The notes: generated by a model from the sequence alone, not told the origin. A stretch of DNA of 64,000 nucleotides from Diadema antillarum (GCF_040938485.1 NW_027271431.1:2418001-2482000); one strand, 5' to 3'. Numbered from the stretch's first letter, positions 1 to 7,282 are shown. Numbers and translations: made by a program.

Positions 1-890
1 TCTTTCATGAGGACATGAACAAAATGCGAAGAAATTTTCTGAAGAAAAATAACCCATATTCAACCCCTTCTGCCGCATACATCATACAAGATTGTAGCCA
101 AAATAATTCATGATATCATTACAATCCTGCTGGGCACCAAGAGCGCAAAAAAAAAAAAAAAGAGAGAAAAATACCTCCAGCAAGTTGAAAAGCGCATGTA
201 TACTTGCACTGCTGTTTAGAAAAAAAAATCACAGACGCATATTATACAATCTGAATTTGTTCATCATCACTTTACACAGTATTTCACAAACGAAAATGTT
301 CATTCTTTCTGAATAGTTCAATACACATATAAGGAAGAATATAGGTATAGAAAGCATCACGAATATTACCTATAATGCATGCGTACTTTTTATAGAACGC
401 ATAGTGTACAACTTACGGTGTATTCGAAGAGATTTTCGGAAGAAAAATAAATAACGGATTAATATTTTCAACCCTTCTTTTCTCTGCTTCTTTTTCGTAT
501 CAATTCACAAAAATGGTTCTTTTTTGTTCTATCTGAATCGTATCAGTGATCTATTCTCGTGTAATAACAACGCACAGAATTGTCATGGTAGGTTTGATTG
601 GTTGGTGCGACTCTGAGCTTGCCATTGTGGGAAGTGGTTCGTGATTTATGTATGCCCCCCCCCCCCCCCACTCTGCTTGGGTGTATAAGCTCTTCATGCA
701 GTTTCAGAGCGGCATCATCCATTCTAAGCTTGCCCGACATCATAATGATGGGATTACGTTCATATGTTTAGACCATGAGAATGGTCAGTCATTTCGCATT
801 ATAATACATGGTGAAACCGTCTATGAGCTCCTTGTTTTGCATTGACTGCATAACCACACATTTCTGTTGATATTGCTATATTCTACGCAT

Positions 891-1200
891 AAAGGACGTC
901 ATCACCTTAACATACATGTGGATTTAGCGAATGTGGCAATATCAGTTAGTATAACACACAGCGAAAGTTTGAGGATAATTGGACAATCCGTTTAGAAGCT
1001 AACATTTTTTTGAAGTTTCAGTGCCACCATCGGTGGATGAGAAGACAACTTCGCTTTGTGATGCCACATGTGAACAACAATACAAAAAAAAAAAAAATGT
1101 AGAGAAAATTTAACATTTCATTTTCACGTTGCTCACAAGAGTGCACTTATCTTGCCTCTTCAATATAAGGCAGGAGGGAATAATATTACCCTTAACATAC
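891..1200. mobile_element. Degenerate arm of a TTAA-targeting (Kolobok-like) MITE
   Basis: aaaggacg...gtggatt...gaaagtttgaggataattggacaatccg...ggatgagaagac aligns by eye with the reverse complement of 59905-60097 and with the arms of 45425-45985. Confidence 0.65.
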
Positions 1201-1836
1201 GTACTTCAATTACTTGACGAGGAAATGTGTACTATTTTTTTTTCAAAAAAAATAAATTTTGTGGAATTCTCTTTTTATTTTCTTTATATCCACATAGCTC
1301 TACGCATGTGACATCGCTGTTTTGTCATTCAGCAGTGACTCAGAAACTTTAAGAATTTTTGGCTCTTTAGGGTTTGAGAGATTGGTGATTAGTAATCTTT
1401 TCGTTTTATTACCATCCCCCCGCCCCCACCCCCCGCTCGAAAGAAAAGGCCGAGGGTCAATGCATTGTTTCCCAACCCCCTTAGAAAACATGTTAACCTC
1501 TCTAAGAATGCAGAAGTTGTTCTATTAGGTCTGATTTAGTGGAGGATATAATAATGGTGTACTCTCTCCGAGTATGATCTGTTTTGGCAACCTTGTATAA
1601 GTTTAGTCAATCTCCAGAAACCACTTACTGATTAACGATTGCATCTCTTTGTCTCCTGCGTAAAAAAAAAAACGTAATTGTCTTGGAGTGAAGATGCAGT
1701 TATTAAATGCATCATGCTACAAGAAGAGACATAAATAAGAAACATGTTTATTAGTTGAGCAGGCATGAAATGGATTGATGCTTGACTTGGTCAAAAGTGT
1801 ACCTTTGGAAAGAATTCAGTAGAATTGTTCAAGCTG

Positions 1837-1963
1837 GTAAGCATATATTTTTCATATGATTTTATTGTCCTAAAATGCAAAATGATCTTGAAATGACAAA
1901 ATGGTCTTTTGATTGCAATGCAAGCATCCTTTAGAGCTTCAAGTGTTTCTTGTTTCTTTTCAG
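1837..1963 (+). other. Putative 5'-UTR intron of the lengsin-like gene
   Basis: Donor ctg|gtaagc at 1837; pyrimidine tract plus cag ending at 1963, 15 nt before the ATG. Confidence 0.55.
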
Positions 1964-1978
1964 GTACCTTGTTCCACT

Positions 1979-3316
1979 ATGGCTCTTGAAACCATTCTTC
2001 AGAAGCTTGATGAGGAAAACATTGCCTTTGTCAGATTTGAACAGACTGATGTGTATGGAGTTGCCCGTTCAAAGACAATTCCAGCACGTCATTTTGCAGA
2101 AAAGGCATCTGGAGGACTGAACTTTTATCTTGGACACTTGGGTTATGATCCTCAGGCAGGGTTTGTGCCAGACAGTGCATACACTGCTGCCGCAGGTCAC
2201 TGTGATGCGGTATGTTTTCCCGATTTCAGTACATTCCAGGTCATCCCATGGAGCAAGAGGACTGCACGCATTCTCATCGAGCCCACCTTCCATGGTAAGC
2301 TGGTGGAGGCACACCCAAGAGTGGTGGCTCGAAGGCAGCTGGACAAGCTGAGTGCCATGGGGTTTTCGCTTCTGTCAGCTCATGAGCATGAGTTCTACCT
2401 CGTTGACAAAGCAACTCGTAAAACTGTGAATGATGACGTGAACATCAGATCGACAATCCGTCTGGCTGCATATGAGGATGTCATTCACACCATAATGGAC
2501 GGGATGGTAGTAGCGGGGGTCGATGTGGAATGTGCAGAGACGGAGTACGGACCTGGTCAGACAGAAATTTCGTACAAGCCAGCGTTTGGGATCCGAGCAG
2601 CTGACAATGCACACACCTTCAAGACAGGTATCAAAGAGATGGCACTCAAGAATGGGTATATGGCAACGTTCATGTCTAAACCATTTCCAGACAAGAGCGG
2701 CAGTGCTTGTCACTTCTGTCACTCTTTGTGGGATGCTGAAGGTAAGGTACCACTTCTTTATGATGCTGGTAGTCCTACAGGATTGTCCGAGGTAGGCCAG
2801 TATTGGTTAGCCGGTTTGTTGGAACACACCCCCGCCATATGTGTGCTGATGGCACCCACCGTAAACTGCCTGAAGCGGTTTTTACCATACTCGTTTGCTC
2901 CATATAATGCCACCTGGGGGAACGATAACCGGAGTACAGCTGTGAGAATAAAGGTCAATGGAAGAAAGGGGACGTACCTGGAGAATCGTCTCGGCGCAAG
3001 TGGCTGCAACCCCTATCTATCTCTTGCTGCCACAGTTGCTGCAGGACTGGACGGCATCCAGAGGAGACTGCCCCTACCGCCATGTGTGGCTCCATCAGAC
3101 TCCGCCTACGATCCAGCCTGCGTGCCGGCTGGTACCAAACAAGTGCCTTGTAACATGAAGGAGGCCATGAGGGCGCTGCATGACGATGACATCATCCGAT
3201 CAGCACTGGGTGAGGAGTTCATTGAGTGCTTCCTGGCTGCCAAGAGGCATGAATTGTCCTTGGAGGAGAAAAATGAAGCGGGCTGGGAGCAAAAGATGTT
3301 TTTTGAATATATGTAA
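1979..3316 (+). CDS. LGSN: Lengsin-like / class I glutamine synthetase-family protein, 445 aa, single coding exon
   Basis: Open frame from ATG 1979 to TAA 3316. The TTG start at 1913 in the ORF track lies in an intron (acceptor tttctttt-cag ends at 1963; candidate donor gtaagc at 1837). Motifs FVRFEQTD.YGVARSKTIP, GFSLLSAHEHEF, ETEYGPGQTEI, FGIRAADNA, CHSLWD, WLAGLL.H, TWGNDNRS, YLENRLG and NPYLSLAATVAAGLDG match vertebrate lengsin and GSI as I recall them. Confidence 0.9.
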   Translation: MALETILQKLDEENIAFVRFEQTDVYGVARSKTIPARHFAEKASGGLNFYLGHLGYDPQAGFVPDSAYTAAAGHCDAVCFPDFSTFQVIPWSKRTARILIEPTFHGKLVEAHPRVVARRQLDKLSAMGFSLLSAHEHEFYLVDKATRKTVNDDVNIRSTIRLAAYEDVIHTIMDGMVVAGVDVECAETEYGPGQTEISYKPAFGIRAADNAHTFKTGIKEMALKNGYMATFMSKPFPDKSGSACHFCHSLWDAEGKVPLLYDAGSPTGLSEVGQYWLAGLLEHTPAICVLMAPTVNCLKRFLPYSFAPYNATWGNDNRSTAVRIKVNGRKGTYLENRLGASGCNPYLSLAATVAAGLDGIQRRLPLPPCVAPSDSAYDPACVPAGTKQVPCNMKEAMRALHDDDIIRSALGEEFIECFLAAKRHELSLEEKNEAGWEQKMFFEYM

Positions 3317-4279
3317 TTCAACTGATATTCAAGTGTAGTGAAGGCCGGTACAATTTCAGGGATACGAAGAAGTCTCCGGTCAGTCTCACTGATAAGCTGT
3401 CATTCTTTTGATGGCTACATTCCTTGCACATAAATTTGTCTGTGTCAAACGTGCAAAAGTCAATTTTCAATCAAATCAGACCAAAGATAATATTTCAGAT
3501 TAAACGCATTATTTCTGCAGAAGTCGAATGACCAAATTAAATGCAGACTTAGTCATTAGCAACTGAGTTCAATCTCAGATTAAACAGATATGATTATGCA
3601 ATGATAGACATTTTAGCAGGATAGAAATATTTGCAGTTTTTTGTGAACATTTCTGTGGGGAAAATGAGCTACAAATTGGTTTAGTCAGTAGGATCCAGAC
3701 CTTTGGGCCATTAAGGTAACCGTGCATGTGGTGACCATATTGATAATACACCTTTTGCCTTGTTTTGTTTTCATGGCCATGTGATTATCAGGTCTTGTAC
3801 TTTCTAATGTGTCAATATCAGTAATTGATACCTCTGTCCGCATGGGTGCTCTTGATACTGTACTGTGCGAAAATACACCAGATGGTGGACTGCACTTATT
3901 CAGAAGAAGAGAAGGAGGAGGAGGTCATTTGGCACACAAAGTGTGTTCATTATATATATACATACATTTGTACTGTATAAAAAAAAATCTACTACCAGTG
4001 GAACCTATACTAGATGCGAAATTTACATAATATTGTATTTTTCATTCGTGTGATATTCTATTCTATATCATTCTTTCATGCTAATCCTGTAATCCGCATT
4101 CTGTATGAGTCTATATAGCAAGAGTGGATTTTGAGGTATCATGTGAATACAGTGTGCTTGTTCACTCAAAGACAAGGTAGACACTTCCCAAACATATTTG
4201 AATTGCGTTGCATTAAAGCATTAAAATATATATACCTGATGTAGGCACCTATGGATTTGATATACCGCGTATGCAAGTA

Positions 4280-5132
4280 CAGTATATGTCAAAAAAAAAA
4301 ATTACAACCTGACCTTCCGCAATGATAACTTAAAAAATAGTGAATCAGTCCTTATACAATTTCAGGGTACGAAACTACAACTCCTTGCCCACATCTTCCA
4401 GAAAATCCCATTCGATTTGCATTCAGTGGTCAAAGAGAAATGAGGAATTTTGTAGAGCATGTGAAGAATCTCTTCCCTCCAAGTTCTGTCTATTGTGTTC
4501 ACACACAAGAGGATCCAAGTGCTATGACTTGGAAAAATCAGACTCATGACATGCTTTACAAAAATCCACATAAAGACAAATATTTGCAGAGGTTACATAA
4601 AATAAGTGTGCGTAACAACTCGTGCTTGTCACTGAGAATTTAATGCACAATCACGTTACGCGTTGCTGAACTCTTTTGCCTTTGGCATTGCCAAGGCATT
4701 GCCAACTTTTACAAACTTAATCTCCGCAATGATAACTTAAAAAATAGTGAATCAGTCCTTATACAATTTCAGGGTACGAAACTACAACTCATTGCCCACA
4801 TCTTCCAGAAAATCCCATTCGATTTGCATTCAGTGGTCAAGGAGAAATGAGGAATTTTGTAGAGCATGTTAAGAATCTCTTCCCTCCAAGTTCTGTCTAT
4901 TGTGTTCACACACAAGAGGATCCAAGTGCTATGACTTGGAAAAATCAGACTCATGACATGCTTTACAAAAATCCACATTTCTCTATGACCACTTAACCAA
5001 ATTGAATGGCGTTTTCTACAAAATAGAGCTAAGATGTAATATTTTAAACCATGAAGTAGCATTTAGACAATTTAATCATATTGGGTGTTGGAAATGCGAA
5101 AATTTGATTGTAATTTTTTGGGGGACATACTG
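4280..5132 (-). mobile_element. Tc1/mariner-type MITE copy 1, enlarged by an internal duplication and insertion
   Basis: TA at 4278-4279, then CAGTATATGTC; ends GGGGGACATACTG at 5132. The body is the reverse complement of the copies at 5135-5565 and 9693-10146. Confidence 0.8.
4316..4978 (+). repeat. 256-bp direct duplication (4316-4571 / 4723-4978) with a 154-bp copy of 6728-6881 between the copies
   Basis: Direct comparison: 3 mismatches between the duplicates; 1 mismatch between insert 4570-4723 and donor 6728-6881. Confidence 0.92.
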
Positions 5133-5134
5133 TG

Positions 5135-5565
5135 CAGTATGTCCCCCAAAAAATTAGAATCAGATTTTCGCATTGATAACACCCAATATGATAAATCTGT
5201 CTAAATGCTACTTCAGAGTCTTAGCTCTATTTTGCAGAAAACCCCATTCAATTTGGGTAAGCGGACACAGAGAAATGGGGATTTTTGTAAAGCATGTCAT
5301 GAGTCTGATTCTTCCAATTTTAGCACTTCGATGCTCTTGTGTGTGAATACAATATAGACAGAACTTGGAGGAAAGAGATTTTTGACATCCTCCACAAAAC
5401 TCCTCATTTCTCTTTGACCACTGAAGCAAATTGAATGGGTTTTTCTGTAAGATGTGGGCAATGAGTTATAATTTCATACCCTGGATTTATATTTAGATTG
5501 ATTCACTATTTCTAAAGATATCCTTGCGGAGGGTCCCGTTGTAATTTTTTTGTTGGGACATACGG
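5135..5565 (+). mobile_element. Tc1/mariner-type MITE copy 2 (431 bp), inverted relative to and abutting copy 1
   Basis: Starts CAGTATGTCCCCC, ends GGGACATACGG, followed by TA at 5566-5567. Separated from copy 1 only by TG at 5133-5134. Confidence 0.8.
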
Positions 5566-7282
5566 TATAATTTGCAAATTATATCCGTCTTGTGCTTTAA
5601 ACTGAGGACTTGCCTTAAAGGGTGTTCAGTGGTAATTCCTCGCAGTTTTCCTGTGTTAGGATTCATTTTAGTATAGAGCAGGTTGATTTTTCATGTGTTT
5701 TTCTCTTTTTTTTTTGCTTAAGAGAGAGTAAAGATAATTCACTTTTTAGTGTAACATTAATGTTGTATAAATGATTGTAGATTTGCTATAAAGATTCTTG
5801 CCACAAACCACAAAACACCGTTTGCTCGACTACACTGTTGTATTATTTACGTGTAAAGCTGCATGAACCAATACAAATTGTGGGTTTTCTCATTACAGGT
5901 AATATTTGTTCCAACAAAAGACTATTACAGAGGTGGTGACACATCCATTATTTGATACAATGTAGTAGTGCCTACATGGTGATTCAACAATGATTTTCAC
6001 TTAAATACACTGTAGGAAATTTTATGTATGTGACTTGTAACTTAATGTCATCATCACGTCTTCACAAAATACAGTTGGAGGCACAGCAGATTCACATTAT
6101 TATAGATCGTATGCATTAGTTACGACATGTACCCTAAGCAGTACTGAATACTAGTATATAGGTAGTAGTGCTGAGCTTATGGAAACTAATTGAATTAAGG
6201 TATTATTGGAAACAAAAGAGACATATGATATCCAAAGAATTTGTTTTTGTAAAGAACACAGAAAAGCAGTGAAGAAATGTGGGAGTGCTTGCTTATCATC
6301 TCATTCTTCTTTTTTTCAGTATATTTCGTCAGTGCAATATATTGCACTTATCAAGTCCTTGAATCGAACACCGGCTTTGTCGTACCCCCGTCATCGTATC
6401 TAAATAGTGACTACGCACATGTTTTCGTTTTCTGCTCATCGTAACGGAAATGGCAGGATATGGGTTTGTTTGGGTTTTTTTAAAGTGAAAGAAAACCGCA
6501 CATTTTCTTTTTAATCACCAGTCCTGAAGAAGGACTGTATAAATCCTCTGAATAAATCAGATGTCAGACTTGTCTCTTGAATGTACATGAATATTCATTG
6601 TTTTGTGATGTCAAATATTTGTAGTGCCAACCCATGTCACATTTTACCATTGGGTCAACAGATGATTATGCATATTCGGATTTGCTGGTCATTGAATGGA
6701 TTTCGAATTGGGTGTAATACAAGTAGTATAAAGACAAATATTTGCAGAGGTTACATAAAATAAGTGTGCGTAACAACTCGTGCTTGTCACTGAGAATTTA
6801 ATGCACAATCACGTTACGCGTTGCTGAACTCTTTTGCCTTTGGCATTGCCAAGGCATTGCCAACTTTAACAAACTTAATCTATGCAAGGTTCTATTTCAT
6901 GACAGTGATTCGCATTCATAATGTATTGTAAATGCTGATCATAAGTGATAACAGAAGTTACGACTTGCGAAGTAGCGATATGACGCTGTCGGTGACAACA
7001 GCTGTCATGAAATCAGTAAATCTTTACCTCTGATATTTTTACCTGTGACATTTTGTCTTGTTACCGTTGTAATGGAGCAGAAAATTGCATATTGATGATT
7101 TGCATGTGAAGCCACTGTTTCAATATTTCGTTGATAAGAAGACACTACATGTATTTTGGATAAATGCTGGGATATAGTCTATTTTTCTAAAATAAAGTAT
7201 GATTATCAGCTGCCATGGTGAATGGGATTTTACAGAGTGCCACTCTGTTTTCTTGATATATCAGTGAGGTGAGTTGGCTCAG

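What the first reader, a model, noticed from the sequence alone, without database searches (positions are those of the whole stretch)
1979..3316. Proto-lengsin with a catalytic core but no ammonium residues: candidate animal gamma-glutamyl-amine ligase
Seen: the residues matching GSI metal/ATP/glutamate ligands are present (HEHEF at 2381-2395, ETEYGPGQTEI, GSACH, KRF, NRS..VRI, LENR). The Glu327 flap position of GYEAP is Phe (PYSFAP, TTT at 2894-2896), and there is no D50-type DGSS motif. Known: vertebrate lengsin is a dead GSI relic lacking several of these ligands, while bacterial GlnA-like enzymes with an aromatic flap residue and no D50 (PuuA/PauA/GlnA3 type) glutamylate polyamines or monoamines. 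I also recall, unverified here, that gamma-glutamyl-monoamine conjugates including gamma-glutamyl-serotonin occur in invertebrates such as sea urchin larvae with no gene assigned. Inference: this could be the active ancestor of lengsin and the missing amine-conjugating enzyme.
Basis: partly seen in the sequence, partly recalled or inferred. Interest (0 to 1): 0.85.

Follow-up and report, generated by a model that had tools for sequence, protein, structure and literature searches.

The report
Sea urchin lengsin-like amine ligase gene
This is an intact, single-exon sea urchin gene for a glutamine-synthetase-like enzyme already annotated as "lengsin-like"; it keeps all the catalytic machinery but has lost the ammonia pocket in the way bacterial enzymes that attach glutamate to organic amines have, so it probably glutamylates an unknown amine.

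Summary
Window 1979-3316 (+) is one uninterrupted 445-aa ORF. It is a class I glutamine synthetase homologue (Pfam Gln-synt_C, 3.9e-90), 99% identical to NCBI "lengsin-like [Diadema antillarum]". All metal, glutamate and phosphate-handling residues are present.

The ammonium site is gone: D50->Y50, followed by a 12-residue inserted loop; Y179->I156; E327->F306. This is the signature of bacterial gamma-glutamyl organic-amine ligases (PuuA, IpuC, AtdA1/NpaA1). The best solved structural match is the 1-naphthylamine-glutamylating enzyme NpaA1 (TM 0.93).

A tree puts the gene in a deuterostome clade that also holds vertebrate lengsins. Those lengsins have lost E129, E212, H269, R339 and R344. So "active relative of lengsin" is supported, but "ancestor" is not: it is one of many echinoderm paralogues.

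The substrate is unknown. I found no record of free gamma-glutamyl-serotonin in sea urchins; the sources I read report it only in annelids and a cone snail. A fairly conserved Asp (D57) in the inserted loop could stand in for D50.

The scan noted a similar tandem array elsewhere in this genome. Verdict: a real, annotated gene with a plausible, untested amine-ligase function; a new member of a known kind; moderate interest.

The parts
1979..3316 (+). Complete coding sequence (445 aa plus stop) of a lengsin-like class I glutamine-synthetase-family ligase, in one exon
   Evidence: ORF list and translation; Pfam Gln-synt_C 3.9e-90; 99% identical to NCBI lengsin-like of Diadema antillarum; AlphaFold model pLDDT 97.3
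2126..2128 (+). Codon of Y50, the position of the ammonium-deprotonating D50 of GlnA
   Evidence: MAFFT, hhalign, strand 47-50 in the model; among the most variable positions in intact echinoderm paralogues (91st percentile)
2135..2170 (+). 12-residue insertion H53-P64 in the N-terminal domain, absent from GlnA; contains D57 (2147-2149)
   Evidence: hhalign gap of 12 against GlnA. PuuA has an insertion at the same place. It is placed like the extra N-terminal loop that lines the amine pocket in NpaA1. D57 kept in 81 of 117
2381..2395 (+). HEHEF: E136 and E138 = metal ligands E129 and E131
2444..2446 (+). Codon of I156 at the position of Y179 (ammonium site; equals V201 of NpaA1, which sets substrate preference)
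   Evidence: NpaA1 paper
2537..2569 (+). ETEYGPGQTEI: E189 = E212 and E196 = E220 (metal n1). E187 and Y190 fall where NpaA1 has E232 and W235, by numbering offset
   Evidence: for the GlnA mapping; the NpaA1 equivalence is inferred from residue numbers
2699..2719 (+). GSACHFC: H245 = H269 (metal n2); C247 at the H271 position
2873..2902 (+). KRFLPYSFAP: R300 = R321 (glutamate carboxylate); F306 (TTT 2894-2896) replaces flap E327
2927..2989 (+). NRS..VRI..YLENR: R318 = R339, R323 = R344, Y333 at R355, E335 = E357, R337 = R359
1341..3894 (.). Stretch covered by single collinear contigs (about 97% identical) in three public runs of a close relative
   Evidence: records 1, 9, 17 and 18; the listed joints all lie outside the gene and every listed indel lies outside the CDS; the run type is not on record

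Best explanation
The gene encodes a cytosolic, catalytically competent member of the class I glutamine synthetase superfamily. It is of the 'glutamyl organic amide synthetase' type rather than a true glutamine synthetase. Inferred mechanism, by homology: two metal ions (E136, E138, E189, E196, H245, E335) and ATP activate the gamma-carboxyl of L-glutamate (held by R300 and R337) as gamma-glutamyl phosphate (R318, R323). An organic amine, not ammonium, then attacks to give a gamma-glutamyl amide. The small acidic ammonium pocket (D50', S53', Y179, E327) is replaced. In its place are Y50, a 12-residue loop (H53-P64) presumably contributed by the neighbouring subunit, I156 and F306, with Y190 and Y304 nearby. 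That should make a larger, aromatic-rich pocket. It is one of many echinoderm paralogues whose pocket positions vary while the catalytic core stays fixed, which suggests a family with diversified amine specificities (conjugation, inactivation or assimilation of amines). Vertebrate lengsin is a catalytically dead branch of the same deuterostome family. Shown: the sequence features, the fold, the phylogenetic position and the conservation. Inferred: the activity, the oligomeric pocket geometry and the class of substrate.
For: All ten catalytic residues are kept. The model is confident (pLDDT 97.3, pTM 0.95). The best solved structural match is NpaA1, the 1-naphthylamine glutamyl ligase (TMq 0.93, rmsd 2.0-2.5). 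True GS structures score 0.84-0.89. Among reviewed proteins, IpuC scores 0.92, and GlnA4, Haloferax gamma-glutamylputrescine synthetase and gamma-glutamylanilide synthase score 0.90. D50->Y, Y179->I, E327->F and a 12-residue N-domain insertion match the features the NpaA1 study gives for amine ligases that do not use ammonium. PuuA (P, V or T by alignment, Y) and an IpuC in a complete ipu operon (C, T, W) show the same pattern at these positions. None of the nearest 50%-cluster representatives of 400-520 aa has the true-GS signature; the flap residue is F in 39, W in 26, Y in 7 and L in 7. A bacterial sister-clade member lies in an operon with an ABC importer, a second GS-like gene, an M20 peptidase and an Amidohydro_2 gene. 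Purifying selection: 71-73% identity to orthologues in other sea urchins. Against a ~97% identical relative there is no listed indel in the CDS but ten in the flanks, and 10 synonymous versus 4 non-synonymous among the first 14 CDS differences. In 44 catalytically intact echinoderm paralogues, the positions of D50, Y179, V213, N264 and G325 lie at the 89th-98th percentile of variability, while the ATP-site positions 271 and 355 are nearly fixed.
Against: There is no biochemical data for any animal member. The protein scores below the curated cut-offs of every NCBIfam equivalog (gamma-glutamylputrescine synthetase 255 vs 650; GmaS-type 255 vs 470; GlnA 245 vs 429), so no substrate can be transferred by homology. 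D57 in the inserted loop is fairly conserved and was aligned with D50 by one method, so some ammonium use cannot be excluded. H271->C and R355->Y change GSI ATP-site residues. The closest Lytechinus orthologue has Ala at E220, and about a fifth of echinoderm paralogues have lost catalytic residues, so the family is prone to becoming non-enzymatic. The margin of TM-score over true GS is small. Only a monomer was modelled, so the pocket, which forms between subunits, was not seen. Transcription is not proven, because the type of the runs is not on record.
Confidence: 0.62

Rival explanations
1. It is specifically the enzyme that conjugates biogenic monoamines (serotonin, dopamine, histamine, octopamine) to glutamate, that is, the unassigned invertebrate gamma-glutamylamine synthetase.
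For: The predicted pocket is rich in aromatic residues (Y50, Y56, F62, Y190, Y304, F306). An acidic E187 lies two residues before E189, where NpaA1 has E232, which binds the amino group of an aromatic amine. Family members exist in annelids (Owenia; Riftia), a group in which gamma-glutamyl-serotonin is reported.
Against: Nothing links this paralogue, or any animal member, to a monoamine. Free gamma-glutamyl-serotonin in sea urchins was not found in the searched literature; only transglutaminase-made protein serotonylation was. With a dozen or more paralogues per genome and variable pockets, any one gene has a low prior for a given amine. Polyamines, dietary or xenobiotic amines and small alkylamines are equally compatible.
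Confidence: 0.15
2. It is a genuine glutamine synthetase (glutamate-ammonia ligase) of the GSI type that works beside the animal GSII enzyme.
For: The best sequence match among solved structures is a true archaeal GS (212 bits). The catalytic core is complete. D57 could serve as the catalytic Asp.
Against: D50, S53, Y179 and E327 are all replaced. It is below the GlnA equivalog cut-off. It lies in a clade whose relatives all lack the GS signature. Enzymes with this pattern are reported not to convert ammonium.
Confidence: 0.08
3. It is a non-catalytic structural or binding protein, like vertebrate lengsin, that merely still looks intact.
For: Loss of catalytic residues happened repeatedly in the family: vertebrate lengsin, a Ptychodera homologue, two sea urchin subclades, and E220->A in the Lytechinus orthologue.
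Against: All ten catalytic residues are retained here, in the D. antillarum protein and in P0002. The substitution pattern is mostly synonymous. Dead members sit on long branches, while this one has a short branch (0.18).
Confidence: 0.1
4. It is bacterial contamination, or a recent horizontal transfer, rather than an animal gene.
For: The coding sequence is intronless. The gene's 2-kb block has 46% G+C against about 36% beside it. Identity to Chloroflexota proteins is 45-46%.
Against: It lies within 64 kb of animal DNA with repeats and other animal genes. Orthologues and paralogues sit on chromosome-scale contigs of several echinoderms. The eukaryote clade is well supported (99% SH-aLRT) and includes cnidarian, annelid, hemichordate and vertebrate members.
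Confidence: 0.02

Closest known systems
Vertebrate lengsin (LGSN), the lens protein with a class I glutamine synthetase domain
   Same: Same fold and the same deuterostome clade in the tree. Identity is 36-41% over the whole GS region. R355->Y is shared by some members.
   Different: Lengsins carry a long N-terminal extension (529-780 aa against 445). They have lost E129, E212, H269, R339, R344 and mostly R321 and R359, whereas this protein keeps them all.
NpaA1 / AtdA1 (gamma-glutamyl-1-naphthylamide / -anilide synthases; PDB 8wwu, 8wwv, 8x6z)
   Same: Best structural match (TMq 0.93). Conserved metal, ATP and glutamate sites. The Glu flap and D50' are lost. There is an extra N-terminal loop, and a small aliphatic residue at the Y179 position (V201 against I156).
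   Different: Only 26-27% identity. They are bacterial catabolic enzymes encoded with dioxygenase genes. The loop sequences were not compared residue by residue, because I could not obtain the NpaA1 sequence.
IpuC (glutamate-isopropylamine ligase) and PuuA (glutamate-putrescine ligase)
   Same: Same superfamily and the same pattern of replaced ammonium residues, with an aromatic flap (W and Y against F). PuuA has an insertion at the same place, with an Asp in the same MAFFT column as D57. The fold match to IpuC is TM 0.92. NCBI names a cnidarian family member 'glutamate--isopropylamine ligase-like'.
   Different: Identity is 29-31%. PuuA falls in a separate clade. They keep H271 and R355, where this protein has C and Y. 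The protein is below the NCBIfam equivalog cut-off.
Uncharacterised bacterial 'glutamine synthetase family proteins' of Anaerolineae and metagenomes (P0087, P0108, P0292 and others)
   Same: Sister clade of the eukaryotic family (98% SH-aLRT). Identity is 43-46%. Same F flap, I at position 179 and S at 264, and the same loop with a conserved Asp.
   Different: Bacterial. One lies in an operon with an ABC importer, a second GS-like gene, an M20 peptidase and an Amidohydro_2 gene. They have H at positions 271 and 355.
True glutamine synthetase GSI (E. coli / Salmonella GlnA; archaeal GS 8ool)
   Same: Same fold, metal ligands, glutamate site and phosphoryl-transfer residues.
   Different: It lacks D50, S53, Y179 and E327, and has a 12-residue insertion after position 52.

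Membership tests
Class I glutamine synthetase superfamily (Pfam Gln-synt_C / Gln-synt_N) | Significant match to the catalytic domain profile and the GS fold | tested here: met
   Gln-synt_C 302.8 bits (cut-off 24), covering 111-439. The N domain matches weakly (22.8 bits, below 33.4). The model has pLDDT 97.3 and TM 0.84-0.93 to GS-family structures.
Class I glutamine synthetase superfamily | Two-metal site and phosphoryl-transfer residues (E129, E131, E212, E220, H269, E357, R339, R344, R359) and glutamate-binding R321 | tested here: met
   All ten are present.
True glutamine synthetase (glutamate-ammonia ligase, GlnA) | Ammonium site D50', S53', Y179, E327 (flap) | tested here: not met
   Y50, an insertion where S53 would be, I156 and F306.
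True glutamine synthetase (glutamate-ammonia ligase, GlnA) | Score above the NCBIfam GlnA equivalog cut-off | tested here: not met
   244.6 bits against a cut-off of 429.15.
Glutamyl organic amide synthetases (GoaS: PuuA, IpuC, AtdA1/NpaA1, GlnA2-4; GmaS alongside) | [quoted passage not shown] | tested here: met
   F306 and Y50 with an intact core; the criterion is taken from PMC11335346.
Glutamyl organic amide synthetases (GoaS) | Additional N-terminal-domain loop or motif that lines the amine pocket of the neighbouring subunit | tested here: inconclusive
   A 12-residue insertion H53-P64 is at the right place. Its sequence was not compared with the published motif, and its position in the oligomer was not modelled.
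Glutamyl organic amide synthetases (GoaS) | ATP-dependent gamma-glutamylation of an organic amine, with no activity on ammonium | not testable with these tools
   Needs an enzyme assay.
Gamma-glutamylputrescine synthetase / GmaS-type equivalogs (NF045547, TIGR03105) | Score above the curated equivalog cut-off | tested here: not met
   254.8 against 650, and 255.4 against 469.6.
Lengsin family (animal GSI-like clade) | Groups with vertebrate lengsin to the exclusion of bacterial GS-like proteins | tested here: met
   The eukaryote clade has 99% SH-aLRT. The deuterostome clade that holds vertebrate lengsins and echinoderm paralogues has 93% (quick IQ-TREE search). The lengsin stem branch is long (1.04), so its exact place is less sure.
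Lengsin proper (vertebrate LGSN orthologue) | Long N-terminal extension and loss of catalytic residues (non-enzymatic lens protein) | tested here: not met
   445 aa with no extension and all catalytic residues kept.

The most novel reading that the evidence does not exclude
The expanded echinoderm (and annelid, mollusc, cnidarian) lengsin-like genes are the long-unassigned invertebrate gamma-glutamylamine synthetases. On this reading they are a diversified family of ATP-dependent ligases that inactivate or store biogenic and dietary amines as gamma-glutamyl amides. This gene would be one specificity variant, and vertebrate lengsin the dead remnant left after vertebrates moved to other routes of amine inactivation.
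Probability: 0.2. Interest if true: 0.75.

Novelty: new member of a known kind. Interest (0 to 1): 0.45.

Why it matters
Gamma-glutamyl conjugates of serotonin and other amines are reported in annelids and molluscs. As far as I know, and in the sources I could search, no gene has been assigned to their synthesis. Animals outside vertebrates carry many catalytically intact lengsin-like genes that nobody has assayed. This gene shows the signature now established for bacterial organic-amine glutamyl ligases, which gives a concrete and cheap candidate set for that activity. It also explains what vertebrate lengsin was before it became a lens protein. The gene itself is already annotated, and the family has been known in sea urchins since 2006, so the value lies in a testable functional prediction rather than in a new kind of element.

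Tried and rejected
1. I tried to settle the D50 question from pairwise HMMER alone. It aligned D57 with D50. I rejected this in favour of Y50, because two MAFFT runs, the hhalign profile alignment and the model's secondary structure all agree.

2. I tried to get a residue-level alignment to NpaA1 (8wwu) by searching a 67-residue piece against PDB sequences. 8wwu was not among the matches. The E187/Y190 = E232/W235 equivalence therefore rests on numbering offsets only.

3. I looked for aniline or naphthylamine GS-like genes among plasmid hits. They were not in the 60 listed, but I obtained an IpuC in a full ipu operon instead.

4. I looked for a second copy in the window. There is none.

5. I looked for the Wyatt 2006 lengsin paper. 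It is not held, so what I say about it comes from citations and memory.

6. I searched the literature for free gamma-glutamyl-serotonin in sea urchins, and for any paper linking lengsin to amine glutamylation. Nothing was found.

7. I looked for a canonical AATAAA downstream of the stop. There is none on the + strand before 6551, so the 3' end is undefined.

8. The run type (RNA or DNA) of X1-X3 is not on record, so I do not claim expression.

9. Contamination was considered and rejected (see rival explanations).

Full report
WHAT IS THERE

Window 1979-3316 (+) is a single uninterrupted ORF of 445 codons from ATG to TAA. A pyrimidine-rich tract ending in AG lies about 15 bases upstream of the ATG, so an untranslated 5' exon is possible. 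The whole coding part is in one exon.

The protein matches the glutamine synthetase catalytic domain (Pfam Gln-synt_C, 3.9e-90) and, weakly, the N-terminal beta-grasp domain. It is 99% identical (six differences) to the NCBI protein "lengsin-like [Diadema antillarum]". It is 71-73% identical to orthologues in other sea urchins. The window is therefore sea urchin DNA, and the gene is already annotated. No second copy lies in the window. The neighbours are unrelated animal genes.

CHECK OF THE OBSERVATION

I took E. coli GlnA and PuuA from the K-12 record and mapped the Salmonella/E. coli numbering onto the protein.

- Metal ligands: E129, E131, E212, E220, H269 and E357 correspond to E136, E138, E189, E196, H245 and E335.
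- Glutamate and phosphoryl-transfer arginines: R321, R339, R344 and R359 correspond to R300, R318, R323 and R337.
- All ten are present. The flap residue E327 is F306 (TTT, 2894-2896).

For D50 the methods disagreed at first. A pairwise HMMER alignment to an archaeal GS put D57 (GYDPQ) on D50. Two MAFFT alignments and an hhalign comparison of a 117-sequence family profile with GlnA instead put Y50 on D50. They place a 12-residue insertion (H53-P64) after it. The AlphaFold model (pLDDT 97.3, pTM 0.95) has a strand at 47-50 followed by a short helix and a long loop, which fits the second reading.

So there is no D50 or DGSS. However, D57 sits in the inserted loop and is kept in 81 of 117 family members. 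It could act as a displaced D50 or bind a positive group of the substrate.

The last two are family-wide and nearly invariant among echinoderm paralogues (C or N at 271; Y at 355). I read them as constrained variants, not decay.

WHAT FAMILY IT BELONGS TO

The protein is below the curated cut-off of every NCBIfam equivalog: the GmaS-type, gamma-glutamylputrescine synthetase and GlnA.

An exhaustive profile search found 9,760 relatives. Among the best representatives of 400-520 aa, none has the true-GS signature D50/Y179/E327. The flap position is F in 39, W in 26, Y in 7 and L in 7.

A maximum-likelihood tree of 90 sequences (quick search, LG+C20) shows the following.
- A well-supported eukaryotic clade (99% SH-aLRT).
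- It holds the alveolate Vitrella, a group with the cnidarian Hydractinia, a group with the annelid Owenia, and a deuterostome clade (93%).
- The deuterostome clade holds the echinoderm paralogues, a hemichordate protein and the vertebrate lengsins.
- The sister of the eukaryotic clade (98%) is a set of uncharacterised bacterial "glutamine synthetase family proteins" from Anaerolineae and metagenomes. They are 43-46% identical to the query and have the same F flap.
- PuuA lies in a different clade.

Vertebrate lengsins from two frogs, a burrowing toad, a gecko and a fish lack E129, E212, H269, R339 and R344, and mostly R321 and R359. This confirms they are catalytically dead. The query is therefore a catalytically intact relative of lengsin. 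It is not its ancestor: it is one tip of a large echinoderm expansion, with eight or more distinct paralogues from D. antillarum alone among the top hits.

WHY AN AMINE LIGASE IS THE BEST READING

The best solved structural neighbour of the model is NpaA1, the 1-naphthylamine glutamyl ligase of Pseudomonas sp. JS3066 (TM by query 0.93, rmsd 2.0-2.5). True GS structures score 0.84-0.89.

Among reviewed proteins the list is headed by mammalian lengsins. These are followed by glutamate-isopropylamine ligase IpuC (0.92), GlnA4 gamma-glutamylethanolamide synthetase (0.90), Haloferax gamma-glutamylputrescine synthetase (0.90) and gamma-glutamylanilide synthase (0.90). The margin over true GS is small, so this is supportive only.

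The NpaA1 study (PMC11335346) makes these points.
- Such "glutamyl organic amide synthetases" keep the ATP, glutamate and metal sites.
- Most carry an extra N-terminal-domain loop from the neighbouring subunit that lines a large hydrophobic amine pocket.
- The residue at the Y179 position (V201) sets substrate preference.
- None is reported to convert ammonium.

The sea urchin protein shows each sequence feature: Y50, the inserted loop H53-P64, I156 and F306. PuuA (P, V or T by alignment, Y) and an IpuC from a complete ipu operon on plasmid pTC1 (C, T, W) show the same pattern.

By numbering offset from the paper, the query's E187-T-E189-Y190 corresponds to NpaA1's E232-x-E234-W235. In NpaA1 the two Glu bind the amino group and the Trp is essential. 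This equivalence is an inference, not an alignment.

One bacterial sister-clade member lies in an operon with a Liv-type ABC importer, a second GS-like gene, an M20 peptidase and an Amidohydro_2 protein. That looks like a nitrogen-compound utilisation cluster.

IS THE GENE UNDER SELECTION AND EXPRESSED?

Contigs from three public runs of a close relative cover 1341-3894 collinearly at about 97% identity. All listed insertions and deletions there fall in the flanks (1548-1863 and 3329-3550), and none falls in the 1,338-base CDS. Of the first 14 listed CDS differences, 10 are synonymous.

Among 55 echinoderm family members in my alignment, 44 keep all ten catalytic residues. In those 44, the positions equivalent to D50, Y179, V213, N264 and G325 are at the 89th-98th percentile of variability. 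The inserted loop is more variable than the median column. This pattern is what substrate diversification on a fixed catalytic scaffold would give.

The run type (RNA or DNA) is not on record, so I do not claim transcription.

WHAT IS NOT SUPPORTED

The link to serotonin or other monoamines is conjecture. In the searchable literature, gamma-glutamyl-serotonin is reported as an earthworm metabolite and in cone snail venom. For sea urchin embryos I found only protein-bound serotonylation made by transglutaminase. No paper ties lengsin-like proteins to amine glutamylation.

It fits the hypothesis that annelids and an abalone have lengsin-like genes. It also fits that NCBI's pipeline names the Hydractinia homologue "glutamate--isopropylamine ligase-like". 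Neither is a test.

Against a confident enzymatic assignment:
- The Lytechinus variegatus orthologue has Ala at the E220 position.
- Two sea urchin subclades and the hemichordate protein have lost several ligands.
So the family repeatedly drifts into non-catalytic roles.

VERDICT

The gene and its family are already known and annotated, the ancestor wording is wrong, and the named substrate has no evidence.

The scan's notes record a similar reading for a tandem array of four lengsin-like genes elsewhere in this genome. I did not check that note, and it is not independent evidence.

I rate the finding a new member of a known kind, of moderate interest, because it offers a cheap and decisive enzyme assay for an old unassigned invertebrate activity.

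Noticed in passing
P0003 (Lytechinus variegatus orthologue), aligned to query residue 196: The closest named orthologue has Ala instead of the metal ligand E220 (GPGQIAMSY against GPGQTEISY). The Diadema proteins and P0002 keep Glu, so this orthologue may be losing activity in one lineage.
   Followed up: partly
P0081/P0083 and P0089/P0118 (Diadema and Strongylocentrotus paralogues); P0127 (Ptychodera): Two sea urchin subclades on long stem branches (0.64-0.67) and the hemichordate protein (end branch 0.77) have lost several catalytic residues. These losses look independent of vertebrate lengsin, suggesting repeated conversion of this family into pseudoenzymes.
   Followed up: partly
L006:966-11250 (metagenome contig, bacterial sister clade): A conserved operon: two ABC ATPases, two permeases, a Peripla_BP_5/6 binding protein, the GS-like gene, a second GS-like gene with Gln-synt_N_2, an M20 peptidase and an Amidohydro_2 gene. 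This recalls the amidohydrolase-GS fusion of fungal FluG and plant NodGS (the latter from memory).
   Followed up: no
P0121 (4424 aa), P0142 (2757 aa), P0128 (1356 aa): Very long predicted proteins with three to six GS-like stretches each. They are either real multi-domain proteins or gene models fused across tandem arrays.
   Followed up: no
window 868-1368 and 4208-5200: The flanks of the gene are high-copy repeats, with summed contig depth in the thousands to over 100,000 against about 30-70 over the gene. The contigs of the related species end there.
   Followed up: no
window 48316-48461: A run of 146 N (assembly gap or masked stretch); I left it alone.
   Followed up: no
window 2387: In the related species' contigs, the His between the two metal-binding Glu of HEHEF is Tyr (CAT->TAT). 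This is not a ligand position.
   Followed up: yes
window 3317-6550: There is no canonical AATAAA on the + strand downstream of the stop codon for over 3 kb, so the 3' end of the transcript is undefined.
   Followed up: partly
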